NCBI RefSeq assembly: GCF_006345805.1
Contig: NC_042998.1
Coordinates: forward strand, 119,784,001-119,848,000
Reading direction: 5' to 3'
Length of the DNA stretch: 64,000 nucleotides
Source of the DNA: Octopus sinensis
Taxonomy: Eukaryota
The translations under genes were made by a program, and so were the position numbers. This document shows positions 11,622-36,350 of this stretch, in pieces (position 1 is the stretch's first letter; every line of letters starts with the position of its first letter). The notes below the pieces were generated by a model. It had not been told where the DNA came from. It saw nothing but the letters and a program-made list of their open reading frames with translations, and ran no database searches.

Positions 11622-11701
11622 TCACAAATCATTGTTTTTTATGTAACGGTTCCCTTCTGAATGACGGCCAAAATATATGTATCGACTTTTACCATATCGC
11701 A
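11622..11701 (-). CDS. LRMDA: LRMDA exon 7 (coding part, to TGA)
   Basis: TTTCCAG acceptor; (V)RYGKSRYIYFGRHSEGNRYIKNNDL*, the conserved LRMDA C-terminus. Confidence 0.95.
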
Positions 11702-11820
11702 CTGGAAATAAAAAAAATTTCATTTAACTTGGATTATCTGAAAAAATAGGATTAGTGTTAGCTAGATAAATAGGGTTATCTGGAAAGTATGAGTATTATT
11801 TAGGGTTTATGAGTGTAGAT

Positions 11821-12239
11821 CAGTGGTTCTCAAATGGGGTTCATAAGGCCCTTGGGGATCTGTATGATTGAGTTGGCCAATACTTTCACTGGAGAGTATG
11901 CCATCATTATGATATCCCACACCCTAAGAAATGGTATGAACACCAACCAGAGCCAGTCACTGAGGGAGAGAATATTACCATCCTATGGGATTATAGGATA
12001 CAGACAGACAGGCAAATAAATGCTAACAGACCAGGCATCGTCACCAAAGACCTAAGACAAAAAAACATTAGTTATACTTCTGCAATACACAAAATATTAA
12101 AAAAATTTTTATGCTATTCCTAATATTTAATTATAAAAGTATAAGATTTTTTTAAACATCAAATGGTTAGGAAGGTCTGTCCGAGTAAAATAGTAACCAA
12201 AGGGGTCCATTGGTAAAAAAAATGGTTGAGAAACCTTAG
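11821..12239. mobile_element. hAT/Charlie-type MITE carrying a 200-bp LINE fragment
   Basis: Left TIR CAGTGGTTCTCAA, degenerate right TIR TTGAGAAACC; internal 11864-12066 matches 16555-16757. Confidence 0.65.
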
Positions 12240-12729
12240 TCTTTTCCAGGTGGTGCTATTGAGTTAATTATGGCCTAGGCTGATAATGACTGAAACCAAT
12301 CTAAGTTATCTAAGTTAGATAGTAATATGAATACAGTTAGTGTTGTTTTCAAACAACTGGATCTGTATGCAATGCACAAATATCAGGATACTAGCTTTGT
12401 GTTTTCTTTCCACAAATATTGGTATACTAATTGTGTGCAAATATGTACACAAGTAATGCTATACTAGTGACTAAGCATTTGGTTATGTCTCTTTATATTC
12501 TACATAAACAACCTTGTCCCTTCCAGCAACATAAACAATCCTATAAGTTTGATATCAACCTGTCTGAGACCACTCCTGGTTCTAGGATATAAACTTTCAG
12601 TTTTAAAGACAACTAAATCTAAAACATTACATCAAAATTATATGTTAATTTATATTCTAAACACCAGCTTAGTAGCAACAAAGTTATTTTACCAAATTCA
12701 TTATTTTGAAGTTAATTGAAGCTCCAATG

Positions 12730-13149
12730 ACTGACAACTGACTTAGTAAACATACACAAAATTATAACCATCGTGCCAACAACCACCTTGAACACCTTTT
12801 TGAGCTCCATGTGTCTAACACATGTGGGCATGCCTACAAAGTCAGAAAACAGCACAGCTCCCATGACTTTCGGAAACGTTTTTTTACACTCAAGAGTTGC
12901 TGAAGCACATAACAAACTAGCTGCATCAGTTTTTAGTTGCCGAGACATTGCATCCCTTAAAAACCTCCATGCTCCCTGAAATTTGCCAACACTACACCTG
13001 ATATCCCCCTCTCCATATGCATGTACACATGTATACCATGACTCTTACACTGTTCACTTTTCTGACTTTTGTACATAATTCTGTACATGAACCATTGAAG
13101 AGTTGTAGTGCATCTGAGCACTATACACAATAATTTCATTATTATTATT
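12730..13149 (+). mobile_element. CR1-clade LINE 3' fragment
   Basis: Collinear with 23630-24057 and has the same (ATT)n tail. Confidence 0.85.
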
Positions 13150-13529
13150 AAAGGCACAGTATTTCAACAAAAGCAGTTCTGGTGATATCCCAGTCATGCA
13201 GAAGTTACCACATATACACAATTACCAAGAGATATAAGGTGTAATTCCCATCAGAAATTTTTTTTTTTTTGTGATTCAATAGCTATGCGGTTAACATACT
13301 GGATCAAACTTAGCTACAACCACCGAATTATGTGAGTAACTATGTGAGTGAAATATAAAGAATTCAATATCTAGTGACTCCAGTGTTTGCCATACTGGCT
13401 GTATGGCATTTTTTACTTCGACTACTTGTTTTCCTATCTTTCAACCTGTCCATGTTGAGTAGGGACAAATTATAATATATTCACTTTGTTACTGCTGTTG
13501 TTTTAGCAGTTTTTATTCATAATTTGTAC

Positions 13530-13562
<33 letters not shown>

Positions 13563-13799
13563 GTGTAAGAAAATGTGCTGGAAGTGTGTGTGAACAAGAG
13601 TATGTCTTTCAGATACGCTGTGCATTAGAGAGAAAGTGTGTGTGTGTGTTTACATGTTAGAGATAGAATGTGTTTGAGAAAGTATCAAAAAGAGAGAGAG
13701 AGAGTGTGTGTAAGTTTGGTGAGAAAGAGAAAGAGAATGTACATTTGGGAGTTTCATACTACTTTTAGAAATGAGATACAAAAAAAAAAGTAAACTTAC

Positions 13800-13863
13800 C
13801 ATTTTTGCCAGGTTTAGATTCAGGAAGTGGGGTAAATCTGGACTCTGTATATTTTTCATGACT
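13800..13863 (-). CDS. LRMDA: LRMDA exon 6 (64 nt)
   Basis: CTCAG acceptor; SHEKYTESRFTPLPESKPGKN plus G; donor GTAAGT. Confidence 0.92.
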
Positions 13864-13880
13864 CTGAGTTAAAAACATTT

Positions 13881-13908
13881 TATAATAATAGTAGGAGTAG
13901 TAGTAGTA

Positions 13909-13972
<64 letters not shown>

Positions 13973-14002
13973 GAGCAATAATAATAAAAATGATAATAAT
14001 AG
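13881..14002. repeat. (TAA)n/(TAG)n microsatellite
   Basis: Directly visible, about 18 nt from the exon 6 acceptor. Confidence 0.95.
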
Positions 14003-17000
14003 TAAACAACATTCGAAAACATTCAACCTATTGATAAAGATACTTTTGACCATGATGTTGATGTAGGCAACTTAGAGCTTGAAGTAGTAGACGACCAAAC
14101 TGAAAGTGAAGTAACAGGATGTAGGAATGAACTTGAGGCTGAAATGGCTGACACATTCACCAAAGCCAATAGAAAGAAAATACTTGAGGCAAACAACAAT
14201 ATCCTGAGAGAGCTAGGCATCTCTAAACATCTAGAAATGAATGAGGGAGATCAACTACCAATGTTTCAGAAGACCAAACTAAATCACTATGATCAAAATA
14301 TATTACTATGCCTCGAAGCAACTTCTCCTTGAAACTGAAACAGATTTTAACCTCATTAAACCATCTTATATAGTGAACAGCTATTGTTGCCACAAAGAAA
14401 ATAGGCATCAAGATAAAGGGAAAAGGTTCACAAAAAAGCACTCAAACACCCAAGGTGGAAAGAGTGCTTAAATAAGGAAATCGAGAGCTTCCAATGGGAA
14501 TTATCTATCTTAGATGAACTCTCCAAAAGAAATAGTGTAAAAACAAGAAGGACTAGAAAGATAAAGCAAAAATACAATCTGATAAACAAGAATGAAGTCC
14601 TGAGAGCAAAAGAGATGGTTAAGCAAAAAATGCAGGTTAAGGCCCAAATTTTACAGACAAAATAAGATATTTAAAACTGATGCCAAAAAATTCTACTGAA
14701 AGTTAGGGAAACAGTCCAAATTAAAAGACCAACCAGATAATGAAATAAGTAGTGACATTTTGGAAAAGTATATGGAATGATAGAAGGGAATTCAACAAGG
14801 AAGCTGACTGGGTAGAGAGGGAAGAAGAAAGAATGGCTGAGACTGAAGAAGAGATGGAACAATATTACAATGTAGAAACTAACAAGATTTATCTAAAACT
14901 CATAAGTGGAAGTCTCCTGGACATGATAAAATTCCAAACTTCTGGCTTAACAACCTCCCATCATTACACTGTCAGTTAATGGAATGTTTCTCTAATGTCA
15001 TCAGAAACTCCTAGAAGACTCCAAGCTGGCTAACATTAGGGATAACATACCTACTCCCTAAAACAAGTGGCACAAGAAGCCCCCAAAACTACAGGCCAAT
15101 CACTTGTTTGGCCACCATGTACAAAACACTTATATTCATCCTCACTAAAAGGATGTAGCAATTTCTCAATGCAAACAACATCCTTCCCCTTGAACAAAAA
15201 AGGTGCAAAAGAAACTCATACAACTGCAAAGACCAACTACTAATAAATGCATGATGCTCAAAAATTGCTCATTCAAAAAATGAAATCTTATCACAGCATG
15301 GAAATACTATTGTAAGGCATTTGACAGTATCCAACATAGGTGGATCTTAAAGGCACTAAATAGATACAAGATCTCTCCTTTCATAAAAGAACATCAAAAA
15401 TAGACCATGGAATATTCTATGGTGGTTCACTCTCTCCTCTCCTCTTCTGTCTTTCCTTCATTCCCTTGTCCCATGAGCTGAATAGAACAAATCACAGTTA
15501 CAAAAATGTTTGTCAAGATCATCTCACACTTACTCTACATGGATGATCTGAAATTATATGCAAATAATGACAGTGGCTACTAGTAACTGAAAAAATTCAG
15601 TGATGACATAAATATGAAATCTGACCATGACAAGTGTGTAAAAGCTTTGTTCAAACTTGGTAAAGTGACAGCTAATACCATAACCCAACTTGATCATGAT
15701 ACAACTATGAAAGACCTGGATCAAGAAGATTTTTATAAGTATCTTGAGGTACATGAAGGGAAAGGGATCCAACATGGATCAATAAAAGAGATCAGGAAAG
15801 AGTATGTCAGAATGGTCCAGAATAGAATTGCAGCTATAAACTCCCTGGCAGAACCAGTTGTCCAGTATAGCCTTAATGTCATCAACTGAAATCTGCGTGA
15901 ACTCCAGCATATGAACATAAAAGCCAGGAAACTGCTGATACTAAACAGAATGCATCACTCAAAATCAGACATTCAAGGCTCTATCTCTCATGAAAGGAAG
16001 GCAGTAGAGGCCTAATTCAAGTTGAAACATTCTATAAAACAACTACAATAGGACTCCAAGTGTACATCCATAGTAACACAGACTGGATGATACAGCTGGT
16101 AAGGCAATATGAACAGAGTAAGAAACTCTACTTAATCTCAAAGGAGATATAAATATAGATAAGCGATTAACCTCCCTGATTATGATGATAAGGAGGACAC
16201 ACCATCCACTAAGACAGCAAAAAGGTGTAAAAAAAACCAGGCAGGAAAACTTGAAGGTAATATTGAGAATGTGGTAAAAAAAAAAAGAAAAACATTGCAT
16301 GGGTAATACCCCAAATGAGCTGGGGAAGCTAATGTAGATATGAGAAGAACTGCAGAATGCTGGTTTGAAAGCCAAAACAGAAACATTTATCCTAGCGGCA
16401 CAAGATCAGAGTCTTCTCACTGAGAACTTTCAAGCTAATGTCAAACACAATGTGGTAGAAACAAAGTGTAGACTCTGCAATGACAAACTTGAGAGTATTG
16501 ACCACACTGTTGCCAGCTGCTCAGTCCTTGCCCCAACAGAATATAAAACCAGGCATGATTGAGTTGGCCAATACTTTTACTGGAGCATATGCTGTCATTA
16601 TGATATCTCACACCTTAAGAAATGGTATGAACACCAACCAGAGCCAGTCACTGAGGGAGAGAATATTACCATCCTATGGGATTATAGGATACAGACAGAC
16701 AGGCAAATAAATGTTAACAGAACAGACATTGTCACCAAAGACCTAAGACAAAAAAGCATGTATGTCAATTGATATGACAATGCCTACTGATAGAAATATC
16801 TCAGCAAAGGAATTTGAAAAACTGTCAAAATATAAGGCCCTTGAGATTGCGATATCTAGGATGTGTCAATTAAAAACCAAAACCATCCCTATGTTGTAGA
16901 CACCTTAGGAATGATCAAGAAAGCAGTGATAAATTTTTTGACCAGATCACTGGGAAACCAATAAGCTAGGAGACTCAAAAAATTGTGTTGGCATAAACTG

Positions 17001-17119
17001 TTCACATTCTCAGGAAGTTTCTCTCCATGTAATATATATACATGCCTTAGGTCTCTAGTTGAGACCTGGTCAGAAGATGAAATAAAATGTAAATCAATCA
17101 GAAAAAAAATAATAATAAT
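14003..17119 (+). mobile_element. R4/Dong-clade non-LTR retrotransposon (RT plus CCHC plus restriction-like endonuclease), pseudogenised
   Basis: Remnant peptides FWKSIW, NYRPITCL, KDQLLIN, YMDDLKLYA, LKAKTETFILAAQDQSL, CRLC..ESIDHTVASC, ILWDYRIQTD, RTDIV and KYKALEI; 3' hairpin GGTCTC-tagtt-GAGACC; TAA repeats on both sides. Confidence 0.88.
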
Positions 17120-17124
17120 CATGA

Positions 17125-17305
17125 CACAAAGCAAGCAAGTTTGTGGGAGGGGGTAAGTCAATTACATAGACTCCAGTACTTGACTGGTACTTATTTCACT
17201 GCAAAAGGTTGAAAGGCAAAATCAACTTCAGTGGAATTTCAACCCCGAATGTAAACAGATGAAATGGTGTGAAATATTTTGTCCAGCATGCTAATGATTA
17301 TGCCA
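17125..17305 (-). mobile_element. SINE family 1
   Basis: Reverse complement of the copy at 17430-17625. Confidence 0.75.
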
Positions 17306-17310
17306 ACTTG

Positions 17311-17625
<315 letters not shown>

Positions 17626-17997
17626 CGTACGTACATACATACATACATATACACACACATTGGGCAATGTAAAGTGCCTTGCTCAATGATGCAACAAGCC
17701 ACTGAATCTGGATCTTATGATCATGAGCTGAACATGCCTAATGTTAAGGACATATGCACTCACAGTGTAGGTGTAAACATTAAAAAAATGCTTCATCTCT
17801 CAGGATGACATTAATAGACCAAAAATCTTATCTTATCAATAAAAACCCATTTGGGTGATTGAACTGCGTGTGTGTGTGATTTTACTGATGAGTACAGTTG
17901 ATTAAAAGGTTCATTGGATGAATGCTTTAAGGTTTTAGAAAGAATGAAAGAAAGAAAAAAGACGGTAATAAAGGTAGAATACAGAACAAAACTCTAC

Positions 17998-18124
17998 CGT
18001 GCTCTCAATTGGTCTGGCTACTTTCATATATTGCCCAATTCGTAAAGCTTCTTTCACTTCTTCATCCTTTATTGGGGTTGAATCGAGGAATTTGAGAGTT
18101 TTTAATTCATAAATTACATAATAC
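17998..18124 (-). CDS. LRMDA: LRMDA exon 5 (127 nt, LRR cap region)
   Basis: TTTCCCAG acceptor; (R)YYVIYELKTLKFLDSTPIKDEEVKEALRIGQYMKVARPIEST. The donor ACG|GTAGAG is weak but gives the required phase 0, so the 3' boundary is less sure. Confidence 0.88.
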
Positions 18125-18300
18125 CTGGGAAAGAAAAAAACCCCAATATTTTCATTATTATATAATAAAACATGAAACAAAGTCCATTAACTGTCCAAAC
18201 AGCTCAATAGATGTTGCTGCAGGTTTATTCACATCCACCATGTGGTTGGGAAGCAAACGTCTTACCACGCACTCATGCCTACACCTATACAGACACACAT

Positions 18301-18700
18301 ATCTCTTTTACTCTTTTAGTTGTTTCAGTCATTTGACTGCGGCCATGCTGGAGTACCACCTTTAGTCGAGCAAATCGACCCCGGGACTTATTCTTTGTAA
18401 ACCCAGTACTTATTCTATCGGTCTCTTTTGCCGAACCGCTAAGTGACGGGGACGTAAACACACCAGCATCGGTTGTCAAGCAATGCTAGGGGGACAAACA
18501 CACACACATACATATATATACATACATATATACGACAGGCTTCTTTCAGTTTCTGTCTACCAAATCCACTCACAAGGCATTGGTTGGCCCGGGGCTATAG
18601 CTGAAAACACTTGCCCAAGATGCCACGCAGTGGGACTGAACCCGGAACCATGTGGTTGGTTAGCAAGCTACTTACCACACAGCCACTCCTGCGCCTATAT
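18301..18700 (-). mobile_element. SINE family 2, full length
   Basis: Head GGCGCAGGAGTGGCTGTGTGGTAAG, B-box GGGTTCAGTCCC, internal (TA/TG)n, tail TAAAAGAG repeats. Confidence 0.9.
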
Positions 18701-19458
18701 CTGTACATATATAACCCTCAACACTATTCGCCGTAATATTATTGTAAGTGCATTGTATTTCAAATACAATGTTTTGAATTGTTGGAATGACAACAGTATT
18801 ATACTACCAAATCAAACACATATACACATGATGAGAATGTTAGGCAAGTTCAGCGACCTATTATATTTCTCTATTGTCTTACCTATTGAAATGTAACCAC
18901 ACACATACAATATAATTATAGTTTTGGAGGAAAATTGTTTTATGACTGTGTGGGTATATAACAATAAAACTATATTAAGCATCATGTATATGCAGACATA
19001 CCCACATATACATACACAATCATCATATGACCACACATACACACATATGACTACACACAAACCCATGCCCACATGCATGATTATACCATAAACCAGTATG
19101 AGAGCCTTTATGCAGGTGCCCAACATGCTAGAAATAGAAGCTAAATTACTTCCTACTGTCTTGAAAAAGAGGATAGAATGAATATGAACCTATATGCACA
19201 CTTCCTACAAAAACAGATGGAATAGTCATAACTGGAATGCCATTGATCATAGGTCTGCTTAGTCAGGTTAAACAATAACAACAAAAACATGCTTACACCA
19301 CACATTCTCACATGAATCCATACATATGACTCTATAGATACATAAGCAAACACACACACACATAGCTGTAATAAAATTATTTCCCTATTGTGTGTTTGAA
19401 ACACAGTTGTCTCCTCAGTCAATAAAAGCAGGAGCCATTCTTAAGGTTGGTAGTTTAA

Positions 19459-19633
19459 CCCTTTCGTTACTGTATTTATTTTGAGATTTTCTGTGTTTTT
19501 TTCAATTACCCTCAATATAGGAACCATAAATTGTGACAAAGGTTTGGTGGAAGATTTTAATTCAAAACTTACAAAAACAAGACATTTGTACTCAGAGCCA
19601 GAGCTGGTTTCAGCCGGGTTGGTAACGAAAGGG
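19459..19633. mobile_element. piggyBac-type MITE (175 bp)
   Basis: Perfect 12-bp TIR CCCTTTCGTTAC / GTAACGAAAGGG flanked by a TTAA TSD on both sides. Confidence 0.9.
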
Positions 19634-20377
19634 TTAATTCTGTCAAAAATCACTGCACTGCTGTCAACTACAGTATTTTTCTGCTCATCACAGTTTCCAT
19701 AATCAACAGTAAACCTATGGTCAAGTGATTAGCCCTGATTAGCTCTGATCATTGGTGGGATTTAATTTTCTGAGCAGACTTTGAACTCAAAATGCAAAGA
19801 ATCAGAACAGATACCTCAAGACATTTCATTAAATGCTCTGATAATTCTGCCAATGCTCTGCTCTTGACTGGCAATTTATCAGCTCTGGATTGTTGAAAGG
19901 CAAAGCTGACCTCAGCAGGATTTAAACCTGGAGCCCTGAAAGCTAGAACAAGTACTGATAGCTCAAATAAATCTGTCAGCTTGATGTATGCTGGAAAAAA
20001 ATGGGTAAGGAATACCAGAAAATGAAGAATCTGGAGAATAAGGATTAGACAAAGTGATTAATGGGTGAAGCATTAATCAATTTTCATCAATCAAACAATC
20101 AAATTCTCTCAGAAGAATAAATAAAGAAGCAGTTGTTGTTTAGACGCCAGGTTAGCTCTGATCAAGCAGACCTGTGATCAAAAATGTTCAAACCATAACC
20201 ATCTCATATTATGCTCAGTAAAATGTATCAAGGACAACATTATCTAATACATCCTCCCTTTCTGAAGATAGAAATGGTTTCAGTGGGACATGACTGCGAC
20301 CTCTATCTGTGGAGAACAACCACAGTCATTACATTGGTCTTGGTGGCAAAATTAAATTAAAAAAAAATTGAACTTAC

Positions 20378-20517
20378 CTATAACGTTGGTAATCTCCATC
20401 ATCTTTTTCTTTGTCTGATAGTTGGTTAGGACAGGCATTATTTCCAAGAAGACTGAGGTATTTTAAGTTAGTGTAAGATGCTTTTAATTTTAAAAGAAAA
20501 CTTTCTAAATCAGAAAT
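20378..20517 (-). CDS. LRMDA: LRMDA exon 4 (140 nt)
   Basis: CTAG acceptor; ISDLESFLLKLKASYTNLKYLSLLGNNACPNQLSDKEKDDGDYQRY plus AG; donor GTAAGT. Confidence 0.96.
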
Positions 20518-20526
20518 CTAGTTGAA

Positions 20527-20535
20527 GTTAAGGAA
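20527..20535 (-). promoter_or_regulatory. U12-type branch point of LRMDA intron 3
   Basis: TTCCTTAAC ends 9 nt before the end of the intron (TTCCTTAAC-ttcaactAG), with no pyrimidine tract. Confidence 0.92.
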
Positions 20536-20539
20536 ATTT

Positions 20540-21760
20540 TACAAAAATTTTATCCAAGCTTCCAGTTTTCATATTCTAGATATCTCTATTTCTAAGTTCT
20601 TATTGGATAGTTTCTATAACTCTTTCAGAGTTATAAAATGAAAACTTAATAGCAGACACTTTTTATTATTTATGGTCCTTAACAATAATAGTAGGACATT
20701 TTGTAATTACCATTCCAACAGTGTCTACAAACATGTTCTGTATCATTGCCAACATGTCATTATCAAACATTGTTTGTGTTATATGCTTGAACTACCTGTT
20801 TCAACTGCTTAATTTTATGTTTCTAGTTCAGTTTCCAATTTACTTACATATCTACCCACTTTGTTGTAGTCTTAGCAAAAACTAATTTTTGTTTTGCCAA
20901 GACAATATGATCAATTGTTTCTTTGTTGCTTTAAAATATCATTTTACATAGCTTTTGGTAGTTACAGATTGAATCTGTGCAGATATCAAGAGATTTTTTT
21001 CAACTTTCAAACCTAAACTCAGAACCAGTGTGGTGATACTTGATAGAATATTGGCCAGCCCAAAGTTATACTCCCTTACCATCAGCTTTTATGCCATATT
21101 TTCTTAATCTTATGTTTTCTTCTCAGAATTCATTTTATTTGTGGGGCTCAAGTAAGGCTGTCTGCTGGCTCTTGTATAATTTAAAAACTTAATTAGCCAC
21201 TTATATGATGACATATAAGTGACTTATTAGTAGGATAGGAACCTTTCCAATATCAGAAGTCTATAGGCCCCCATCAAACTATCAAATTCAAGCAGGTCTT
21301 TGAGTTACAGCACACTACTGATTGTGCTCTTATCACTCATACACCCTAGTTCCATAGACCACCATTCCAACAGCTGTAACAGCTCACAGATGAGCCTAAT
21401 GGTTAATGTTCAGAAAACAGATCATTTGAAACACCCTTTTCTTTCTCAGGACATCCCCTGTTTCAGAATCCTGGTCTGTGTTATTTCCATTATTTTTGTT
21501 TGGGAAATTCAGAACAGCCTCAGATAGGCCACAAATTTGAGAAGGATTCAGCTATTTCTAGCAGACTGAGTGACCACATTGGGAATAAACAAGATGAATT
21601 TGATCAATTATATTTCCTGTTTTCCGCAAAAGTGAGAAGTTGTGTCTCAGTCATGACCATCCTCTTTTCTACAGACATTATCCAAAGTATTTTTTTTTTA
21701 AATAGTGGGACATTTGTTGGTCACTTCCAGCAGGTTGAGTAACAGTGTAGAGGCTTGTTA
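20540..21760 (-). pseudogene. Old R4/Dong-like LINE remnant inside the U12 intron
   Basis: Minus-strand remnants ETIDHIV, NKVGRY..NWKL, ISAQIQS and KNLEIEISRI parallel the element at 14003-17119; heavily decayed. Confidence 0.5.
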
Positions 21761-22611
21761 ATTGGGTTGAATTAAGGGGCCCTGTTTATAAGCTTATTAC
21801 TAGATAGTGTGCTGTTATATTGCCTTCAAGTTTCTATTAACAAAGGAGTAGTTAATCCCAGCACTACAAGCTATATTTGTGTTATATCGCACGTTCGGAT
21901 GACCTCTACTCAACTCCTCAACGTCTAGAATTCTCCCTCTATATCTATGTATTGGGCTAGCTTACTTCATCATCTGGGGGCGTCAACACAACAATTTGAT
22001 AGTGAAATGTATCTCTTTGACAATACATATCTCCAGTCAGTTGAGTTTCACCTTCACATAATATCAATATAAAGTTAAATAACCTTTACTTCTTAATGGT
22101 AGACATAAGCAGCTAAATGTACAGTTAGGTGATATAGTCTTAGTGACAGGACAAAAATTGCTAATCTTTTAAATAGTTTCAATAGTTAAGTTAATGTTAA
22201 CATAGTTAATGTATGGAGTATTAAAAAGCTAATTAGAAATGAATGTGTAGATAGGAAAAAAAGAATATTAGCCAATGGTTAATATGATTTTCATTTTACT
22301 GGTAAGTATGGGAGATAATGGTGGACGTATATTGAGCTTATAAATGACTTCACCATTAAAAGAATAGCAAAGTGAATGAATGTACAAGGTTGGATATTCA
22401 TTGGTGCAAAAAAAGTAGATTTGTTTACAAAATAAATATCTCATTTATGCTACTCAAAAAAACAGTTAAGTTAGTGTTAATATATCTAATGCAACAATTT
22501 GGTCTGAGGCTAAATACAAGTCCTAAATAAATGATATAGGAAACATGATAGACTAAGTGAAAAAAATGAAATTACAAAATTGTAAAAGCAGGAATCAATT
22601 TAAAAAAAAAT

Positions 22612-22620
22612 AAAGGATAC
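22612..22620 (-). promoter_or_regulatory. U12-type 5' splice site of LRMDA intron 3
   Basis: GTATCCTTT matches the minor-intron donor consensus RTATCCTTT exactly. Confidence 0.93.
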
Positions 22621-22747
22621 ATTATTTTTATTTAAAGTTAAAGTATGCAGTGAATTTAAAGCTGGGAACTCTGTGTCATCATCAATCCAGTTGTTATCTA
22701 ACACTAATTCTTCCAAGTCTGTAAAATTTTCTAAACCTTTTAATGTA
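22621..22747 (-). CDS. LRMDA: LRMDA exon 3 (127 nt, LRR repeats)
   Basis: TTTCAG acceptor; (Y)TLKGLENFTDLEELVLDNNWIDDDTEFPALNSLHTLTLNKNN; donor GTATCCTTT. Confidence 0.96.
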
Positions 22748-22904
22748 CTGAAATATAAAATAGAATGTTAGATACAGGGAATGGTAGTGGTGAAGATAGG
22801 ACATAAAATGTAAGGAATGATGGTGGTGAAAGAAGGACAATGTAGATAGTTACGAAAATATGAAGTTTAAAAGAGAGATGGGGGAGAGAGAGATAAATGC
22901 TTTA

Positions 22905-24057
22905 TACCACGACAACTGGTTGAAGTCCTTTATCTTCAGCCGAAAAGAGGTTGTCACAGTTCTAGGACAGCACTCTTCACCCTATGAGATGACATCTGGT
23001 GTACCACAGGGATCTGTTCTTGGCCCCCTTTTATTTGTTGCATATGTTAATGACATAGATGCCAACTTAAAGAATGCCACAGTGCTGAAACATGCAGATG
23101 ACATCAAGCTGTACCTCGAAATAAAGAGGACAGATTCTGTACACTATAGATCTCTATTGCAAGCAGACCTGGACACAATGCAGCAGTGGATCATGGACTG
23201 GCAACTCAAGCTGGCTGTGGACAAATGTACCACCATGCATATTGGGAGGAGAACCCAGCATCCATCTACTCCCTAAACAACACTAATCTCAAAAAGTCTT
23301 CATGTGAACGTGACCTGGGTGTTACTGTCGACAGTGATTTGCGTTGGACAAAACACATCGCTAAAATTGTCAAGAAGGCTGAGGGTGTCTTGGCATCACT
23401 CACCAAATCCTTTGTGAGCCGCTCTCTGTCTATCTATCTGCGGCTTTATATAGCTATGGTAAGACCTCACCTGGAATTTGCATCACCGGTCTGGAACCCC
23501 TATCTTGCCCAGGATATCAATCGCCTGGAAGCTGTTCAGCGACGTGCAATCAAAAGAATACACTCCATCAGGCATTTGTCATATTCTGAACGCCTTACTT
23601 GGGCATGGACACATTGAAACTCCGACGTCGGGCAGCTGACTTGGCAGACACCCATAAAATTATCAACCATCTTACAAACAATAACTCTGAGCACCTTTTC
23701 AAACTCCACCTGTCTAACACCCGTGGACATGTTTACAAAGTCAGAAAACAGCACAGCTCCCATGACTTTCGGAATCATTTTTTCACACTAAGAGTTGCTG
23801 AAGCATGGAACAAACTGCCGGCATCAGTTGTTAGTTGTCGGAGCACTGCATCCTTCAAAACTTCCATGCTTCCTGAGATTCACCAACACTACACCTGATT
23901 TTCTCCTCTCCATACACACACAAGCATGTATCTGACTCATACATTGTTCACTTTCCAGACATTTGTACATTACTGCATATACTCTATACGCACTTTCTGA
24001 CCAGTTGTGGTGCACCTGAGCACTGTATACAATAATTTCATTATTATTATTATTATT
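22905..24057 (+). mobile_element. CR1-clade LINE, 5'-truncated and frameshifted
   Basis: SGVPQGSVLGPLLF, HADD, ERDLGV, RPHLEFASPVWNP and RNHFFTLRV..WNKLP, then an (ATT)n tail. Confidence 0.92.
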
Positions 24058-24671
24058 CAAATATGTGATATTATGGTTTTATCTCATACATGTTGATATG
24101 TGTGCATGCACGTGCACAAGATAACCAGCATTACAAACCTATATGTAAAAATTTGTAATCCAGTACTATATACATAACTTTGTCAAAAAGAGAGGAGAAA
24201 TCTGATCTTTTTGGAATTGTTCCTTCATTTGAGTCTATTAGACTTATTATCATTATCTTTTAACATCCATCTTCTATACTGGCATGGTTTGGACAGTTTG
24301 ACAAGATCTTATGAGTCTAGAGGATCCATAAGACCTTGTCAAACACTGTGTTCCTATGTCTGCTTTGGCATGCTTTCTATAGCTGGATACTCTTCTTAAC
24401 ATCAGCTACTTTACATCTGTAAATTGGTTGATGTTACTGTGTTGGGTGTTTTTTTTTTCTCATGGCACCAGCACTAGTGAGGTCACTAATAGCAGCACAA
24501 TAGTATAATTTGAGATAGAATGATTGACAGACATTCTGTAGTGTTGAAATTGGTAACACAGTCACCTGGCAAGTATGGTTTGGAGATTCCATCATTGAGC
24601 CTTTTTCTCTTTCTTGTTTCAAATTGAATTTTATGATACCTAATATGACTTTATGTTAAAAATCTTACCAT

Positions 24672-25106
24672 AGGCATAGGAGTGGCTGTGTAGTAAGTAC
24701 CTTGCTAATGAACCACATGGTTCCAGGTTCAGTCCCACTGTGTGGCACCTTGGGCAAGTGTCTTCTACTATAGCCTTGGGCCGACCAAAGCCTTGTGAGT
24801 GGATTTGGTAGACGGAAACTGAAAGAAGCCTGTCATATATGTGTGTGTGTGTGTGTGTGTATGTGTATATATGTATGTATGTATATATGTATGTGATTGT
24901 GTGTCTGAGTTTGTCCCCCCCACCTCCAACATCACTTGACAACCGATGCTGGTGTGTTTATGTCCCTGTAACTTGGCAGTTTGGCAAAAGAGACCGATAG
25001 AATAAGTACTAGGCTTACAAAGAATAAGTCCTGGGGTCAATTTGCTCGACTAAAGGCGGTGCTCCAGCATGGCCACAGTCACATGACTGAAACAAGTAAA
25101 AGAGTT
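24672..25106 (+). mobile_element. SINE family 2, full length
   Basis: Same structure as 18301-18700 in the opposite orientation. Confidence 0.9.
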
Positions 25107-25253
25107 AAGGTAAAGAGAGAGAGAGAGAGAGAGAGAGCACACACACACACAAACAGACAGACAGACAGCTATAATGTTGTGTATGTGTATGCAGATGAAT
25201 GCGCATAATCTGTTGCAGAGAAATGGAAGAGAAACTAAGATAGTACAACTTAC

Positions 25254-25354
25254 TACAGTAGATTATAACTTAGATCCAGACGTTTGGTTTTCGTACAGAA
25301 ACTTTCAATTAATTTTTCTGGGATAACATGAACATCATTGCAAGCATATGTCAA
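25254..25354 (-). CDS. LRMDA: LRMDA exon 2 (101 nt)
   Basis: Pyrimidine tract then CTACAG acceptor; LTYACNDVHVIPEKLIESFCTKTKRLDLSYNLL plus TA; donor GTAAGT. Confidence 0.95.
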
Positions 25355-25859
25355 CTGTAGATGGACCGAAAAGATAAAGAAAATAGAAACAATTCAATTA
25401 ACAAAAAGTTGCTGCAACAATAAGTCATAAGCGAAAGATCAGAGATCACAATTTATAATTTATGTCATAAGAATTTAGGTAAAATAATTTGTTTTTAACT
25501 GAAGAACTCAAAAGAGAAAGTTATAAATAATAGCATGTAAACATTGGCTTGAAAACTCTTTTGGGTAGAAAAAAATCAGTCTCATAAGCAACCTTTGACT
25601 TTTGTTATTATTTATAGCTTTATCTACTTTGAGTTTTACAGTTGAAAACTGTAATAATATATAATATCTAACTGAATTAAATAAGAAAATCTAGATCCTA
25701 ATTTTAAAAAAATAAATCATAGTGTTTCTTTTCCTGTTTGAAATTTCAAGCTAAAATATTTTCACAAATAGAAATCACGAGAAAACAGATAAAAGTTTTC
25801 AAAAAATAGAGAGTGATGTTTTAAAAAAAGCAAGCTGTGGTGTGTGACATATGAGATGA

Positions 25860-26220
25860 ATTGAGATGTTCTATGTAGAGAATTGCAGAGAAACATTATT
25901 TCCATGTAAAGAGATATAGTCCAGTGTAGATATAGACTTGGCATAGAGAATTCTAGAAGGGTATAAATAAATCCAGTGTTAATCTGAGTTAGTGTTATAG
26001 AAAACTACAATCCCAAATAAAGGGTTGTAGACAAACAGTCCTATGTAGAACTGTAGAGAGGCATAGTCATGGGTAGAGAGAGACCTTGTGCTGCATAGAT
26101 ATATACTCCTCTGTAAAAAATTGTAGAAAGACACGAACCTGTTGAGAGAATTGTAGAGAGACTTTGTTCTGTGTAAAGAAGCACAGTCCTGTATAGAGTG
26201 TTGTACTGAAATATAGTCCT
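25860..26220. repeat. Degenerate minisatellite (gtcctatgtagagaattgtagagag-like units)
   Basis: Recurring imperfect units of roughly 20-30 nt. Confidence 0.55.
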
Positions 26221-26513
26221 TGAATAAAACCCTGAAATGTAAGGCTTTAATGAGATGTGGTCATGTGGAGAGAGGCTTAAAAAAGGGAATGAGAAGTAGG
26301 AGCTAAAAAGAGTGAAAAAGGAAGGAACAGTGAATGTGTCAAGAGCGGTTATAGGAATAAGGTTTAGAGATAAGCATAGGGTGAAAAAGAACTAGTCTAG
26401 AAACTGAGAAATGAAAATGCAAGTGTGCTTAATACATATAATGTTGATGATGATGACAAGAAGAGGAGGAGAAGGGCTGACATGATTTTGTCTTATTTTT
26501 TAAAAGTCTAACA

Positions 26514-26645
26514 TCATCATCATCGTTTAACGTCCCTTCTCCATGCTAGCATGAGTTGGACGGTTCAACCAGGAATTTGGGAAGCCAGAAGGCTGCACCA
26601 GGCTCCAGTCTGATCTGGCAGTGTTTCTACAGCTGGATGCCCTTA
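26514..26645 (-). mobile_element. RTE-family 3'-end copy
   Basis: catcatcatcgtttaacgtcc...ccatgctagcatga...ctggatgccctt. Confidence 0.85.
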
Positions 26646-27239
26646 TTGTTATTTTTTAAAGGTTAAGATTGCAAAGTCTAATCAAACAGACATATTTCAT
26701 TTGTCACCATATTTATATATCAGATACTATATTTTCCAATGTGTCCTTTATTCTATGGTTGAGTGTAATTTAAGATATATTTGGTTACTATTTCTAGTAG
26801 GTCAAATGATTACATAAAGGCTCCTCATATCAGCTCGGCTGAAGATTAAGGAATATTTGTGTAAATGCACTCCCTAGTTACACTTCCACCATTTAATTTG
26901 ACACAAGGCATTCAGCCTCAGCTTTACCTTTCTTTCTGGGCCTCACCTTTCATATTGTATAACCAACAGACATGCAACTATATTCTTAACTAACATCAAT
27001 CTGTCACTTTTCCCAATTCTTCCAAAATCAAGTTGCTAGAAATAGCTGCTTAATCTTTCTCAAATAACATTTTACCATCTTATATAATGTGGTCTTTATA
27101 CACTATTTCTGAAAAAAAAAAAAAAATGTTTGCCAGGGCAGAAATACATTTGATCATTGACCAGCTTGATCAAAGATGACCTGAGTCTAAATAATAATAA
27201 GCCACTAAAGGAGCCTCTATTTATTATATGCACACTGAG

Positions 27240-27760
27240 GAGGCTTCCACCTTCACATCATTATCACAGCAAGGGAGCTCTTACCATATCGCAATGGTAC
27301 CAATCATTACTACAGTGTTAGAGTTTCTACTTACAGTACAGAAGACTATCATTGCCACTGTGAGAAAATTTTTACCCACAATTATCATGGGACAGGAGTC
27401 TCTATGTAACACTACTACAGTGGGGAACTTTCTAACCACCATTATCATAGTGGGGACATCTCTGCCTCACTATTACTACAGTGGAAGAGTCTCTATTCAC
27501 CTTAAGCAGCATTATCACAAAAAAAGGGGAGCCTTTATCCATCACTACCACCATAAAGAAGTTCTACTCAGCATTACCACAGCAATAGAGACTCTACCAT
27601 CTATTATACCATTACCACAATAGAAGAGCTTCTACCTATCATTACCATTGTAAGGGAGTCTTTACTCACCATTACCACAATAAGATGCTTCTACCCATCA
27701 TTGCAACAGTAAGGGAGATTCTACCTTTCACCACTGTAAGAATGCTTATATCTGTCTTTA
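27240..27760. repeat. Degenerate 30-bp minisatellite
   Basis: Units such as CCATTACCACAATAGAAGAGCTTCTACCTA recur with a period of about 30. Confidence 0.75.
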
Positions 27761-28720
27761 TGATAAGACAATGGAGGAAACTTTAGTTGCTCAACCTGAT
27801 AAAAAAAGCAACTGAATCAAGAGTCAATGCTTCAAAAATCATATCTAATTTTTAAAATTGGATAATGACAACCTAAATACCCTGTGTGTGAGTAGAAGAC
27901 AGGATAGTTAAAACTGGAACCACTTTAATCAGAAGTCTGATAGAATTAAGCCTGATCTGAAACAAAACAATAACAATGGCAACAACTACTATCACCAAAT
28001 CTTCTGTTCCTTCTTATTTACCACAGAGATATTAACAAATTCAACTGAAGGCCTGTTGCTAACAACCCACTACTAGGTCTAATAAATATCTGTAAAGTTA
28101 TTTACAATGATGTAACCACCTACAATGATTCCTTAAACACTACAATGAAATTTCAAGTAATAGTGTACATAAATGCAATTATATATAGAATACTATAAAC
28201 ATAAAAATAATAAAAATAACAACAATAATTATTGTTGTTATAATTCTGTCTGATACAAGATTACAATGGGGTATTATAATTGCCCCAGTTGTATTATTAA
28301 TTAAAACAAAATCACTAACATTCAGTGCAGTTTTTTGATTTAGTCTTGTAATTACTTTGTTTATGTATGGGAACCTTTCCAACCCAAAGAGAAAAGTTTA
28401 GTTTTTAGCCATTAAAAATAAAAAAGATAAAAAGAAAATAAACTAGGGTCATATTACTTGTCACAAACAATATTATTTCCAAGGAAATATAAATTTAGAT
28501 TACTTTTTTTATATTTCTCAATGTAATTTTTGGTTTTGAATCTTATCCGAAATCATTTCAATGCTTGAGTCATAACCAGTAACTAATATTTTTTTACAGA
28601 CAATTTTGTGTGGTACATTGATTTCATTAAATTCATTTATAAAAAGATTTCTTCACAGAAACAGGTTTATCTGAAAATCAATTTTTTTATGCTTTTATAA
28701 TTATTCAGAATAAAAAAAAT

Positions 28721-29097
28721 TAATAATAATAATGAAATTATCGTATACAGTGCTCAGGTGTACCACAACTTGTCAAAAGTGCATATAAAGCATATGCAGT
28801 AATGTACAAATGTCTGAGAAGTGAACAGTTTATGAGTCAGATACATACTTGTGTGTGTATGGAGGGGAGAAAATCAGGTGTAGTGTTGGCAAATCTCAGG
28901 AAGCATGGAAGTTTTGAAGGATGCAGTGCTCCGACAACTAACAACTGATGCCGGCAGTTTGTTCCATGCTTCAGCAACTCTTAGCACGAAAAAGTGTTTC
29001 CGAAAGTCATGGGAGCTGTGCTGTTTTCTGACTTTGTAAACATGTCCACGGGTGTTAGACAGGTGAAGTTTGAAAAGGTGCTCAGAGTTATTGTTAG
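28721..29097 (-). mobile_element. CR1-clade LINE 3' fragment
   Basis: Reverse complement of about 23685-24057. Confidence 0.88.
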
Positions 29098-29299
29098 TAA
29101 CTGAATTCCAAACTCTGGAATCGTTATGATTTTCTGCAAGTTTGTTCTTCTAACAGTAGATTTCTTTGAGCTAAATTTATATATTTAAAAAATTTTGATG
29201 CTCACAATTCCTTATCAGATACACCTACTATTTTGATCTCAAAATCAGACTGACTAATCTTTTAAAATACTGATAGATTTATTTATGATATTTCTGCGT

Positions 29300-30750
29300 C
29301 AATGGGTGCTAGAAGGATCACTACCACTGCTTTTTTTCTTTTGGAAAAGCTGTAAACCTTTTACCAAATTTATTTTTTATGTTTTTGATGGTTAGTTACA
29401 AATAACTTGCACTGATGTTATTTTTCCTTCCACTGAAATTTATAAGTGAGGTAAAAATCAGCTAGTTTATATTATTTTGAAGGACTTTCACAAGCTCTAT
29501 AAATTTGTGCTTAAATGTTACAAACTTCTTCTCATTACTGAAGAGATGTGTTTGTTTTTCCTTGAAAATGTTTGCTAAGCAAATCCACCATGAAATGTAA
29601 CTTTACTAGCCAATCAGGATCTTCCAATTCAGGATAGCTACTAGCATTACCACAAAATGTTTGGAAGAATTACCAAAGGTACTCTATGTAAGCTGCAAAT
29701 CTTTTCAGAACATCACCTTTAGAAAATTCTTAGATGTTATTATGCAGCAATAAATTTGAATAAATACAGTTAATCTCTTTTAGTAATACATAGTAATTTA
29801 GACCTCTTTGCTATTATTTCATTTACAACTTTGATTTAAGATTCATAACTTTCTTACGCTTGGGAAGTAAAGTTTGAGTGCAGAGTGCTGTTTTGGTGAA
29901 TGACACACTGAAAAGAAAGCAATTATTGATTAAGTCATCAGGAGAATCACAAATCCCTTCTTTATCCTTTTCATGCTTGGTAACCCATCTATTGCTACTG
30001 AAACTAAATTTTTAGCGCTTATTTTCTTCTCTTTCAAACAATTGAAATCAGTCTAACAAATATATTTGCCACTTGCTTGTCTCTCATTTTTTTGTTAATT
30101 CAATCAGTTCTTCCTGAGAACCTTTACAATAAATAAATCTACATAAATGCAATCTGTCCAACATTATTTACATCACATGACTCATCACAAGCAACTGAAT
30201 ATCCTGGAGGAGAATTAATGTCTTTGATATGGTATTCAGTAATATTTGATGCCATATCAATAGCTCTTTGGTTATTTTTGGTGGGGGAGAATTTTTTTAT
30301 TATATTAATTATATCATTTTTGTTGTTGAAATCAGAAATTAAATGCCTAACAATATTCTCCATTGGTAAAGGTTTTTCCTCCTTTTGAAATAATTTCCTA
30401 AAATTATCTCAACTTTTTCTATTTTCTTTTCCAGTTTAGAACCATGCATTTTTGTTATTCCCTAGCTGGATACTTTGCAAATGTCTTTCTAAGTCACTCT
30501 TACTGTTCACAAATTTCTCAAAACATCATAATTGTAAGCCAATTGAGTCTTCAATGTAAGTATACATCTCCAACCAAAGAGCTTTGTAGAAGATCCTACT
30601 CTTCTCATCACCAAATTTTTTTCAGATCCAACATAATTGTTCTATCATATGATAAGCTCAATGCTACAAACATTTTACCAATTCCACCAATATTTTACAA
30701 CATAACAGTGACAGACAGGGCAAAAAGTAAAAAACACAATTGAAGCCAAG
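29300..30750 (-). pseudogene. hAT (SPIN/GTF2IRD2-like) transposase remnant
   Basis: Peptides KGGKTFTNGEY, YSVACDESCDV..GQ, LVSVAIDG.PSM, LLLHNNI...G.VLKRF and YPELEDPDWLVKLHFMVD in order, with stops and frameshifts. Confidence 0.82.
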
Positions 30751-31312
30751 CATGAGTCCTGGACCAATCGTATCTGACCCATGAAAGAGAGAGAAAGAGA
30801 GAGGGAGAGAGAGAGCTCTTAGACATCAGATTCAAGCTCAAAGCTCACCAGATATAAATTCCTGATCATGTGCTTTAAATTTTTTTTAAAATTCAATTTG
30901 AGCATGTTGTGCCTGTCTGACATATAAGCTAATACAAGATAATAATCATAAATTGACTTATTGTAGCTCACTGGCATATATGGCATTGATACATGAATAA
31001 CTGGCATATGGGATACTGACACACAGGTGTTGAGAAGAATAGTAAATAGATTAACATAGAAAGCATTCATTTAAATATTTATTTGTGTTTTTTAATTTAA
31101 CAAAAGGATTGCTAGAATACTCATTAATCCACCATTTTGCTTCCAGGATATTTACAAAGCAAACTTTTCGTATTTAATAATAAAGCAAGTGCAATCATAT
31201 TTGATGTAGTCAGCCATTTGACATAAATTTATGTAGATATGTAACAAAGACCAAACAAATGTATCTATGATATTCAATGTTTGCTGACTATTTTTGTAAA
31301 TCTTAGATTATA

Positions 31313-31705
31313 CTAGCAGTATCGCCCGGCGTTGCTCGGGTTGTAAGGGAAATAACTATATAAGCATTTTTAGAGAGTTATAGCCAAAAAATAGCAAAAA
31401 AATGCATTAAAAATTGAAAAAAAATTAAGGTAAATTTTTTTTAAATCGTTGACACATCGTAGATATTTTTAGAGAGTTACTTCCCTTATATAAAAGCGAA
31501 AAAATGCATTAAAATGGAAAAATATGATGGTAAATTTTTTTAGAATCGTAGACTCATCGTAGACGCGCGCTAATACCCAGAAGGGCTCGATATGAATCAC
31601 GACTATAGGATACCCGCTTTTGGTTAAACTGCACCGCAAAATGTGGGAGTAATTACGAATGTAAATCGAAGGGGACAGACACACAACTTCACTCTTATAT
31701 AAAGA
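31313..31705 (-). mobile_element. Complete non-autonomous Helitron (393 bp)
   Basis: 5' A|TCTTTATATAAG, 3' hairpin CCCGAGCAACGCCGGG then CGATACTG-CTAG|T; inserted between A and T with no TSD. Confidence 0.9.
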
Positions 31706-32479
31706 TGCTTTTTTTTTCAGTCATAGAGTTAGATTTATGAAGGTCTTCAGTAGAAAATCCTTCGAATTCTGACTCGCTGCTTGATATAATGAAATTCGTA
31801 TCCATTTTTTGTCAGAATTACAAATTTTGAAAACACAATAGGAACAAATTTCGGAAAAAAATCTCCCATAATTCACGGAATTAAAATTACACTTCGATTT
31901 TTGTACAAAACTGTATTTGAAGTGTTTACGAAGTATAATACGTGTTTTCACGAATGTACTAAAGAGATTTACTCTGATATTCTCATTTAAATATGAATAG
32001 GTAAATTCGGGCGGTTTGGTAACGAAAAGGTTTATATAAGTGTCGTCTGTTTATACATAAACACTGTTTCATACTTTCAGTTTAGTCTTCCTCAAATCAC
32101 TCTGTCGCTAATTTACTCTCTTCCAAGAACATTTTCACTCACTCTTATCTGTTAGCTTCCCATACATTTTACTCATGTATCTATCAGCGTGATAGACAGA
32201 AACAAATATTACATCTAGTTTCACTTTATTCGTTGCACACTGTGTGTTTGCGTGTGCTGTAAACCAGACTAAGAAAAGCATTTGACATACACACCAGAAT
32301 GTGAGTTTTCTGTAAATTTTGCTTAATTGGAGTTTAAATTTTAAAAACTGGACCTGGCATGACGCGATGCATTGTACTCTTAAAACTGCTAGGTAAATTG
32401 TAATTGAAGAAATCCTATATTGTAGATTTGTATAACTCCCAAAGGGAGGCAGATAAAATCTGCCTTTTATAATAAGAGA
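31706..32479 (-). mobile_element. Second Helitron-type 5' end and adjoining sequence
   Basis: A|TCTCTTATTATAAAAGG at 32479, with no hairpin-CTAG end of its own found. Confidence 0.5.
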
Positions 32480-36099: not shown

Positions 36100-36350
36100 T
36101 GCAAGAGCCCTTTGCCAATGTCACGTAAAAAGTGCCCATGGGGGCATCACGTAAAAATTGCTCATGCCAGTACCATGTTAAAAGCACCCAGTACGCACTG
36201 TAAAGTAGTTGGTGTCAGGAAGGGCATCCAGCTGTAGAAACAAAGCCAAATCAGACTGGAACCTGATGCAGCTCTCCTGCTTGCTAGCTCTGGTCAAACT
36301 GTCCAGCTCATGCCAGCATGGAAAATGGATGTTAAAGGATGATGATGATG
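36100..36350 (+). mobile_element. RTE-family 3'-end copy
   Basis: ggaagggcatccagctgtagaaa...catgccagcatggaaa...gatgatgatg. Confidence 0.8.

What the first reader, a model, noticed from the sequence alone, without database searches (positions are those of the whole stretch)
20518..22620. U12-type (minor spliceosome) intron in LRMDA, filled by an old LINE
Seen: intron 3 begins GTATCCTTT and ends TTCCTTAAC-ttcaactAG with no pyrimidine tract, while the other six-exon-flanking donors lack this signature. Established: these are the U11 donor and U12 branch consensus sequences. Minor introns are rare and often rate-limiting for expression. Seen: more than half of the 2.1-kb intron looks like decayed R4-like LINE ending about 10-20 nt from the branch point. 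Inference: minor-spliceosome efficiency could act as a rheostat on this pigmentation-gene orthologue, and the phase-0 position may be ancestral.
Basis: partly seen in the sequence, partly recalled or inferred. Interest (0 to 1): 0.7.

Follow-up and report, generated by a model that had tools for sequence, protein, structure and literature searches.

The report
Conserved minor-spliceosome intron in octopus LRMDA
Intron 3 of the octopus LRMDA gene is a textbook U12-type (minor-spliceosome) intron inherited from early animals and already catalogued in the human and mouse gene, so it is real but ordinary, and it does not contain the claimed LINE.

Summary
The window is Octopus (vulgaris/sinensis-type) DNA. 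It carries a 7-exon LRMDA gene on the minus strand. Its translation is identical to the O. sinensis protein.

Intron 3 (22620..20518, 2103 nt, phase 0) starts GTATCCTTT and ends TTCCTTAAC-TTCAACT-AG. The branch adenosines lie 11-12 nt from the 3' splice site. Each 9-mer occurs only once in the 64 kb, exactly at these exon borders. The other five introns have U2-type donors.

The intron at this codon position is also U12-type in:
- O. bimaculoides, Argonauta and scallop (GT-AG)
- starfish and a fish (AT-AC)
- a jellyfish (AT-AG)

It is U2-type in an annelid, a beetle, a horseshoe crab and a sponge. MIDB already lists human and mouse LRMDA as minor-intron genes (ATATCCTTT donor). The U12 call and the ancestral position are therefore supported, but not new.

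The "old LINE fills the intron" claim is not supported: there was no RT or other protein similarity in any frame and no repeat copies. A real LINE fragment with a reverse-transcriptase domain lies in intron 2 (about 22894-24050, + strand). It is absent from O. bimaculoides, so it is young.

The "rheostat" idea is untested. Repeated conversion to U2-type in other lineages weakens it.

The parts
11622..53832 (-). LRMDA coding region. The 7 exons are 53832-53743, 25354-25254, 22747-22621, 20517-20378, 18124-17998, 13863-13800 and 11701-11622 (stop included).
   Evidence: The spliced CDS of 729 nt translates to 242 aa identical to P0006, O. sinensis LRMDA.
22621..22747 (-). Exon 3 (...[42 protein letters not shown])
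20518..22620 (-). Intron 3: U12-type GT-AG intron, 2103 nt, phase 0
22612..22620 (-). U12-type 5' splice site GTATCCTTT, preceded by exonic AAT (-1 is T, not G)
   Evidence: Single occurrence in the window. Identical 9-mer at the same position in O. bimaculoides, Argonauta and Pecten.
22600..22602 (-). In-frame TAA, 6 codons into the intron (NKNN-VSFIFF*). A retained intron would truncate the protein.
   Evidence: Direct reading of the sequence
20527..20535 (-). U12 branch-point sequence TTCCTTAAC. The branch adenosines are 11-12 nt upstream of the 3' splice site.
   Evidence: Single occurrence in the window. The last 30 nt of the intron are identical in O. bimaculoides.
20518..20519 (-). 3' splice-site AG (TAG|ATT)
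20378..20517 (-). Exon 4 (ISDLESFLLKLKASYTNLKYLSLLGNNACPNQLSDKEKDDGDYQRY-R)

Best explanation
Intron 3 of Octopus LRMDA is an orthologously conserved U12-type (minor-class) intron of the GT-AG subtype. By the established mechanism, U11 snRNP pairs with the /GTATCCTTT donor and U12 snRNP pairs with TTCCTTAAC, bulging a branch A 11-12 nt from the AG. U4atac/U6atac.U5 then catalyses excision and joins ...NKNN to ISDLE... . This mechanism is inferred, not shown here. The intron position and its U12 character date back at least to the cnidarian-bilaterian ancestor. Deuterostomes keep AT-AC ends, a jellyfish has AT-AG, and molluscs have switched to GT-AG. Annelid, arthropod and sponge lineages carry a U2-type intron at the same site, which fits class conversion. 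The body of the intron is ordinary fast-evolving non-coding DNA. If the intron is not removed, a TAA six codons in truncates the protein. Slow or limiting minor splicing would therefore lower output, as for any minor-intron gene, but nothing here shows that this is used for regulation.
For: The splice signals match the consensus exactly, are unique in the window, and lie at the exon borders. The junction is used by annotated proteins of O. bimaculoides, O. sinensis, O. vulgaris and Argonauta. The same-position intron was read directly from genomic loci. U12 GT-AG: O. bimaculoides, Argonauta, Pecten. U12 AT-AC: Asterias, Pogonophryne. U12 AT-AG: Rhopilema. U2-type: Owenia, Tribolium, Tachypleus, Ephydatia. 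MIDB supplementary tables list human LRMDA (CGA|ATATCCTTT, BPS AGATTCTTAACC, scores 94.3/74.3) and mouse Lrmda (CAA|ATATCCTTT, AGATCCTTAACC, 97.9/82.0) as minor-intron genes (PMC6717393). Most orthologues of human minor introns in mollusks are also classed as minor (PMC11347168). Molluscs are relatively minor-intron rich, and O. sinensis was one of the species compared in the pan-eukaryotic intronIC survey (PMC10639083). The intron body aligns at 91-92% with O. bimaculoides. It shares only the last ~28 nt with Argonauta, so only the signals are conserved.
Against: No RNA-seq junction, lariat or snRNA-dependence data could be examined. intronIC itself was not run. A simple pyrimidine-content measure does not separate this intron from introns 4-6. 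Phase 0 is the least common phase for U12-type introns (PMC7367187), though this is only a statistical bias. That the human and mouse intron is at the same codon rests on the 3 exonic nt in MIDB (CGA/CAA = R/Q after NKN) plus the fish locus, not on a human locus read here.
Confidence: 0.93

Rival explanations
1. The intron is removed by the major (U2-type) spliceosome, or by either spliceosome (a 'hybrid' intron). On this view the U12-like motifs are coincidental or vestigial.
For: The termini are GT-AG, which U1/U2 can use in principle. Pyrimidine content near the 3' end is not lower than in introns 4-6. The same position is U2-type in four other lineages.
Against: The donor matches the U1 consensus at only 5 of 9 positions and has T at -1. 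Both U12 motifs are perfect and have been kept unchanged across octopus, Argonauta and scallop, while the rest of the intron has diverged completely. The branch site lies 11-12 nt from the AG with only 7 nt between, which leaves no room for a U2AF-type tract.
Confidence: 0.04
2. One reading: more than half of intron 3 is an old, decayed R4-like LINE that ends 10-20 nt from the branch point.
For: One sense-frame stretch (…HTGSEFRF…CTDSIC…ETIDHIVL…) loosely resembles the Cys/His motif near the C-terminus of some LINE ORF2 proteins. This is my own reading and has no statistical support. LINEs are common in this window. In O. bimaculoides, 1.7 kb of extra repeat-rich sequence does end 12 nt upstream of the BPS.
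Against: No Pfam family (RVT_1, endonucleases or any other) in six frames at E<=10. No protein among 5.8 billion at E<=10. No nucleotide or translated similarity to the LINEs in the window or to about 53 kb of other cephalopod sequence. The true RT-bearing LINE fragment maps to intron 2, not intron 3.
Confidence: 0.07
3. One reading: U12 dependence is a selected, rate-limiting 'rheostat' that tunes LRMDA expression in octopus pigment-related cells.
For: A subset of U12-type introns is spliced more slowly than U2-type introns, which has suggested a rate-limiting role (abstract of PMC4066798). Retention would introduce a stop after 6 codons. The U12 signals have been conserved for hundreds of millions of years.
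Against: The same intron was converted to U2-type in annelid, beetle, horseshoe crab and sponge while the protein stayed conserved. A pan-eukaryotic survey argues that neutral processes explain much of minor-intron evolution (PMC10639083). No expression or retention data exist for octopus. LRMDA is present in animals without melanocytes.
Confidence: 0.1

Closest known systems
Minor (U12-type) intron of human LRMDA and mouse Lrmda as listed in the Minor Intron Database (Olthof et al. 2019, PMC6717393)
   Same: Same gene family. The donor follows the codon after NKN (human CGA=R, mouse CAA=Q; octopus AAT=N). The TATCCTTT donor core is identical and the BPS is of the TCCTTAAC type.
   Different: The mammalian intron is AT-AC and 11.0 kb (human) or 6.4 kb (mouse). 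The octopus intron is GT-AG and 2.1 kb. The human locus itself was not read here.
Canonical GT-AG U12-type introns (e.g. FRA10AC1 and POLR2K in MIDB, which have GTATCCTTT donors and TCCTTAAT/TCCTTAAC branch sites)
   Same: Identical +1..+9 donor sequence in both genes. The TCCTTAAC branch-site core is the same as in POLR2K and mouse Lrmda. MIDB scores for these motifs are 94-99 (5'SS) and about 82-84 (TCCTTAAC-core BPS).
   Different: Nothing structural. This one is phase 0, the under-represented phase for U12 introns.
U12-to-U2 class conversion and AT-AC/GT-AG subtype switching (Burge et al. 1998; Dietrich et al. 1997; Moyer et al. 2020, PMC7367187)
   Same: One orthologous position shows AT-AC, AT-AG and GT-AG U12 forms and also U2-type forms across Metazoa, as these models describe.
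   Different: The direction and timing of the changes are inferred from 11 taxa only. No ancestral reconstruction was done.

Membership tests
U12-type (minor-class) spliceosomal intron | 5' splice site /RTATCCTTT (U11 and U6atac pairing) | tested here: met
   GTATCCTTT, 9/9, at 22620-22612 on the minus strand, and unique in the window.
U12-type (minor-class) spliceosomal intron | Branch-point sequence TCCTTAAC (U12 pairing) near the 3' end | tested here: met
   TTCCTTAAC at 20535-20527, unique in the window as a 9-mer.
U12-type (minor-class) spliceosomal intron | Short branch-site-to-3' splice-site distance (about 10-20 nt) | tested here: met
   The branch adenosines are at -11/-12 and there are 7 nt between the BPS and the AG.
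U12-type (minor-class) spliceosomal intron | No polypyrimidine tract | tested here: inconclusive
   There is no room for a tract downstream of the BPS. However, pyrimidine fraction at -33..-4 is 0.60, equal to the U2-type introns 4-6 in this AT-rich gene.
U12-type (minor-class) spliceosomal intron | Orthologous introns in other species are U12-type | tested here: met
   U12 signals at the same codon in six other species read here and in human and mouse per MIDB.
U12-type (minor-class) spliceosomal intron | Excision depends on U11, U12, U4atac and U6atac snRNPs | not testable with these tools
   This needs knock-down or in-vitro splicing. Rfam found no snRNA gene in this window, which says nothing either way.
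U12-type (minor-class) spliceosomal intron | Classifier score in the U12 range (intronIC or MIDB PWMs) | not tested
   intronIC and its PWMs are not available here. There is only an analogy to MIDB entries with identical motifs.
LINE (R4-like) retrotransposon remnant inside intron 3 | Reverse-transcriptase or endonuclease coding similarity | tested here: not met
   No Pfam hit in six frames at E<=10 and no protein-database hit at E<=10.
LINE (R4-like) retrotransposon remnant inside intron 3 | Other copies of the element in the genome | tested here: not met
   No copy in the other 62 kb of the window or in 53 kb of O. bimaculoides and Argonauta loci. This is a weak test for a low-copy family.
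LRMDA (C10orf11) orthologue | Full-length similarity to LRMDA proteins with an LRR_9/LRR_4 architecture | tested here: met
   Identical to O. sinensis LRMDA. There are 304 hits, and the named top hits are almost all LRMDA/C10orf11 with PF14580 and PF12799.

The most novel reading that the evidence does not exclude
In cephalopods, minor-spliceosome activity might really limit LRMDA output. Intron-3-retaining transcripts, which carry a stop 6 codons into the intron, would then be a regulated 'off' state in particular tissues. Separately, this single position offers a natural series of forms (AT-AC, AT-AG, GT-AG U12, then a GTATAC-type U2 donor in horseshoe crab and fully U2-type introns) for studying subtype switching and class conversion.
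Probability: 0.1. Interest if true: 0.45.

Novelty: already known. Interest (0 to 1): 0.15.

Why it matters
The main value is for annotation. It confirms the exon 3-exon 4 junction of octopus LRMDA, and it explains why three public fish gene models go wrong at this spot. Those models read 'ISF' out of the ATATCCTTT donor of an AT-AC intron. It adds one more worked example of deep conservation, subtype switching and U12-to-U2 conversion of a minor intron. It does not reveal a new mechanism: LRMDA is already listed as a minor-intron gene in human and mouse, and conservation of human minor introns in molluscs has been reported genome-wide.

Tried and rejected
LINE in intron 3:
- Six-frame Pfam scan at E<=10 found nothing. 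The first attempt with DNA references failed because of stop codons.
- blastn of the intron against the window gave only 3 short hits (29-51 nt) elsewhere in the window, plus a 40-nt inverted self-match inside the intron.
- tblastn of the six frames against the masked window plus two cephalopod loci found nothing.
- A six-frame concatenated query against 5.8 billion proteins found nothing at E<=10. One search was rejected for its max_evalue value.
I did not pursue it by other means.

Other dead ends:
- The Rfam scan of the window found no family.
- Locus look-ups for Hydractinia and Acropora LRMDA were not on record. A jellyfish (Rhopilema) was used instead.
- A full-text search for 'LRMDA' plus 'minor intron' found nothing, and 'C10orf11' plus 'U12' found only albinism papers. 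The information was in the MIDB supplementary tables.
The final model rests on P0006.

Full report
**What is in the window.** The region lies in an AT-rich (about 35% GC) animal genome. The peptide encoded on the minus strand either side of the claimed intron matches 'leucine-rich melanocyte differentiation-associated protein' of Octopus bimaculoides at 100% over both exons. I mapped the Octopus proteins onto the window and read the borders. This gave a 7-exon model on the minus strand: 53832-53743, 25354-25254, 22747-22621, 20517-20378, 18124-17998, 13863-13800 and 11701-11622. Its 729-nt CDS translates to 242 aa identical to the O. sinensis LRMDA protein P0006. The O. vulgaris protein P0008 is 100% identical over the part it shares. 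The window is therefore O. vulgaris/sinensis-type DNA.

**The observation.**
- Intron 3 runs from 22620 to 20518 on the minus strand. It is 2103 nt and phase 0.
- It begins AAT|GTATCCTTT and ends TTCCTTAAC-TTCAACT-AG|ATT.
- The two adenosines of TTAAC lie 11 and 12 nt from the 3' splice site. From established knowledge of U12-type introns, this is the preferred branch-to-acceptor distance.
- GTATCCTTT and TTCCTTAAC each occur once in the 64 kb on both strands, against 0.69 and 0.75 expected anywhere by dinucleotide shuffling. Relaxed versions of the motifs (RTATCCTT, TCCTTRAY) occur 4 and 10 times; no other site lies at an LRMDA exon border, and other genes were not modelled.
- Having both at the ends of the same coding intron has a chance probability of roughly 5e-9. 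This is my estimate from those counts.
- The other five introns have GTAAAC, GTAAGT, GTAAGT, GTAGAG and GTAAGT donors.
- The donor matches the U1 consensus at only 5 of 9 positions and has T at -1.
A simple pyrimidine count near the 3' end (0.60) does not separate intron 3 from introns 4-6. The real point is that only 7 nt lie between the branch site and the AG.

**Comparison across animals.** I fetched the LRMDA loci of ten other species and read the intron between the codons NKNx and (I/L/F)xD (sequences). An intron sits at exactly this phase-0 position in all of them.

| Species | Group | Intron type | Donor … 3' end | Length (nt) |
|---|---|---|---|---|
| O. bimaculoides | mollusc | U12 GT-AG | GTATCCTTT…TTCCTTAAC | 4082 |
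| Argonauta hians | mollusc | U12 GT-AG | GTATCCTTT…TTCCTTAAC | 1221 |
| Pecten maximus | mollusc | U12 GT-AG | GTATCCTTT…TTCCTTAAG | 482 |
| Asterias rubens | echinoderm | U12 AT-AC | ATATCCTTT…TCCTTAAC…AC | 487 |
| Pogonophryne albipinna | fish | U12 AT-AC | ATATCCTTT…TCCTTGAC…AC | 1380 |
| Rhopilema esculentum | jellyfish | U12 AT-AG | ATATCCTTT…TTCTTTAAC…AG | 1094 |
| Owenia fusiformis | annelid | U2 | GTAATA…TTCTTCCAACAG | 278 |
| Tribolium castaneum | beetle | U2 | GTGAGT…TTGTTGTAG | 73 |
| Tachypleus tridentatus | horseshoe crab | U2 | GTATAC…TTGCTGTGTTGCAG | 4307 |
| Ephydatia muelleri | sponge | U2 | GTAACT…TACTAAC…CAG | 55 |

The U12 character goes back at least to the cnidarian-bilaterian ancestor. 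Molluscs show an AT-to-GT subtype switch. Other protostome lineages carry a U2-type intron, which suggests class conversion.

**What is already known.**
- The supplementary tables of the Minor Intron Database paper list LRMDA as a minor-intron gene in both human (CGA|ATATCCTTT, BPS AGATTCTTAACC, scores 94.3 and 74.3; chr10:76036135-76047163) and mouse (CAA|ATATCCTTT, AGATCCTTAACC, 97.9 and 82.0) (PMC6717393).
- Other entries there with exactly the octopus donor GTATCCTTT score 94-99. One with the same TCCTTAAC core scores 84.
- Olthof et al. [quoted passage not shown]
- Larue and Roy 2023 note relative minor-intron enrichment in molluscs and include Octopus sinensis among the species compared (PMC10639083).
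- Class conversion, and the bias against phase 0 in U12 introns, are described in Moyer et al. 2020 (PMC7367187).

The finding is correct, but it is the expected orthologue of a catalogued minor intron.

**The LINE claim.** I could not find any LINE in intron 3.
- The intron has no ORF longer than 80 aa.
- Its six-frame translation hits no Pfam family at E<=10 and no protein among 5.8 billion at E<=10.
- It has no other copy in the window. It has no translated similarity to the LINEs elsewhere in the window or to the O. bimaculoides and Argonauta loci.
- Almost the whole intron aligns colinearly with the O. bimaculoides intron at 91-92% identity. With Argonauta it shares only the last ~28 nt, the branch-site region.
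- The O. bimaculoides intron is larger because it carries two extra blocks made of interspersed repeats. These are about 408 nt and about 1.7 kb, and they have many copies in the window. The second block ends 30 nt from the 3' splice site, about 12 nt upstream of the branch site.

A real LINE fragment does lie next door, in intron 2.
- ORFs at 22860-23617 on the + strand carry the C-terminal half of an RVT_1 domain (E 1.5e-16). A typical LINE ORF2 tail follows.
- Compared with O. bimaculoides, this fragment is part of a ~1.16-kb insertion (about 22894-24050) that is absent from that species.
- A very decayed, low-copy element in intron 3 cannot be formally excluded without a cephalopod repeat library.

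**Mechanism and function.** The established mechanism of U12-type splicing (inferred here, not shown) is as follows. U11 pairs with the donor. U12 pairs with TTCCTTAAC. U4atac/U6atac.U5 then catalyses the reaction. Read directly from the sequence, an unspliced intron adds VSFIFF and then a TAA (22602-22600), so retained transcripts cannot make the full protein. A subset of U12 introns is spliced slowly, and whether this holds generally is an open question (abstract of PMC4066798). Two points weaken it. The intron became U2-type in several lineages while the protein stayed conserved. The gene is also widespread in animals without melanocytes.

**Verdict.** The U12-type intron is real (confidence 0.93) and ancient. 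It is already known for this gene family. The LINE part of the finding is not supported, and the regulatory inference remains speculation. Interest is low (0.15).

Noticed in passing
window 22894-24050 (+), inside LRMDA intron 2: A 5'-truncated LINE fragment, antisense to LRMDA. It has the C-terminal half of RVT_1 (E 1.5e-16) and an ORF2 tail spread over three frames. It is part of a ~1.16-kb insertion absent from the O. bimaculoides intron 2, so it is lineage-specific and young.
   Followed up: yes
window 87-1727 (+); related fragment at 34407-34766 (-): An uninterrupted 546-aa LINE ORF with RVT_1 (E 1.7e-31) and a weak PHD/C1-like zinc finger, in a GC-richer stretch (47%). A second, partial copy of the same family lies at about 34.4-34.8 kb.
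   Followed up: partly
window about 59450-63420 (+): A GC-rich (49-51%) block of ORFs that looks like an LTR-type retroelement. It has a DUF7041 gag-like domain, an RVT_1 fragment and an integrase core (rve). It lies about 5.6 kb beyond LRMDA exon 1. It was not assembled or analysed further.
   Followed up: partly
window 18305-18697, 24671-25114, 46933-47162, 6662-6992; L006 30452-30862 and 18074-18530: An interspersed repeat of roughly 400 nt (74-88% identity between copies) is scattered through LRMDA introns 1, 2, 4 and beyond. One copy is inserted in O. bimaculoides intron 3 but not in the window, and one is in the window's intron 2 but not in O. bimaculoides.
   Followed up: partly
L006 (O. 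bimaculoides) 30921-32615: O. bimaculoides intron 3 carries about 1.7 kb of extra repeat-rich sequence. Its 3' edge is only 30 nt from the 3' splice site, about 12 nt upstream of the U12 branch site. The last 30 nt are identical to the window.
   Followed up: partly
Public gene models P0001, P0008 (Octopus) and P0002, P0004, P0005 (fish): Several deposited LRMDA models are wrong. P0001 ends at ...QRYR* by reading into the GTAAGT donor of intron 4. P0008 lacks the exon 5 sequence, and its C-terminus matches frame-shifted readings of exons 6 and 7. Three fish models read 'ISF' after NKNQ, which is the translation of the ATATCCTTT donor of the AT-AC intron. This was verified on the Pogonophryne locus and inferred for the other two.
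   Followed up: partly
L010 (Tachypleus) 12933-12942: The horseshoe-crab U2-type intron at the orthologous position starts GTATACCAAG. This may be a remnant of a GTATCC U12 donor combined with a newly acquired polypyrimidine tract, that is, a possible conversion intermediate.
   Followed up: no
window 46257-47070: A long, imperfect TA/TATG-type microsatellite region that produces spurious 'IYIYIY' ORFs on both strands.
   Followed up: no
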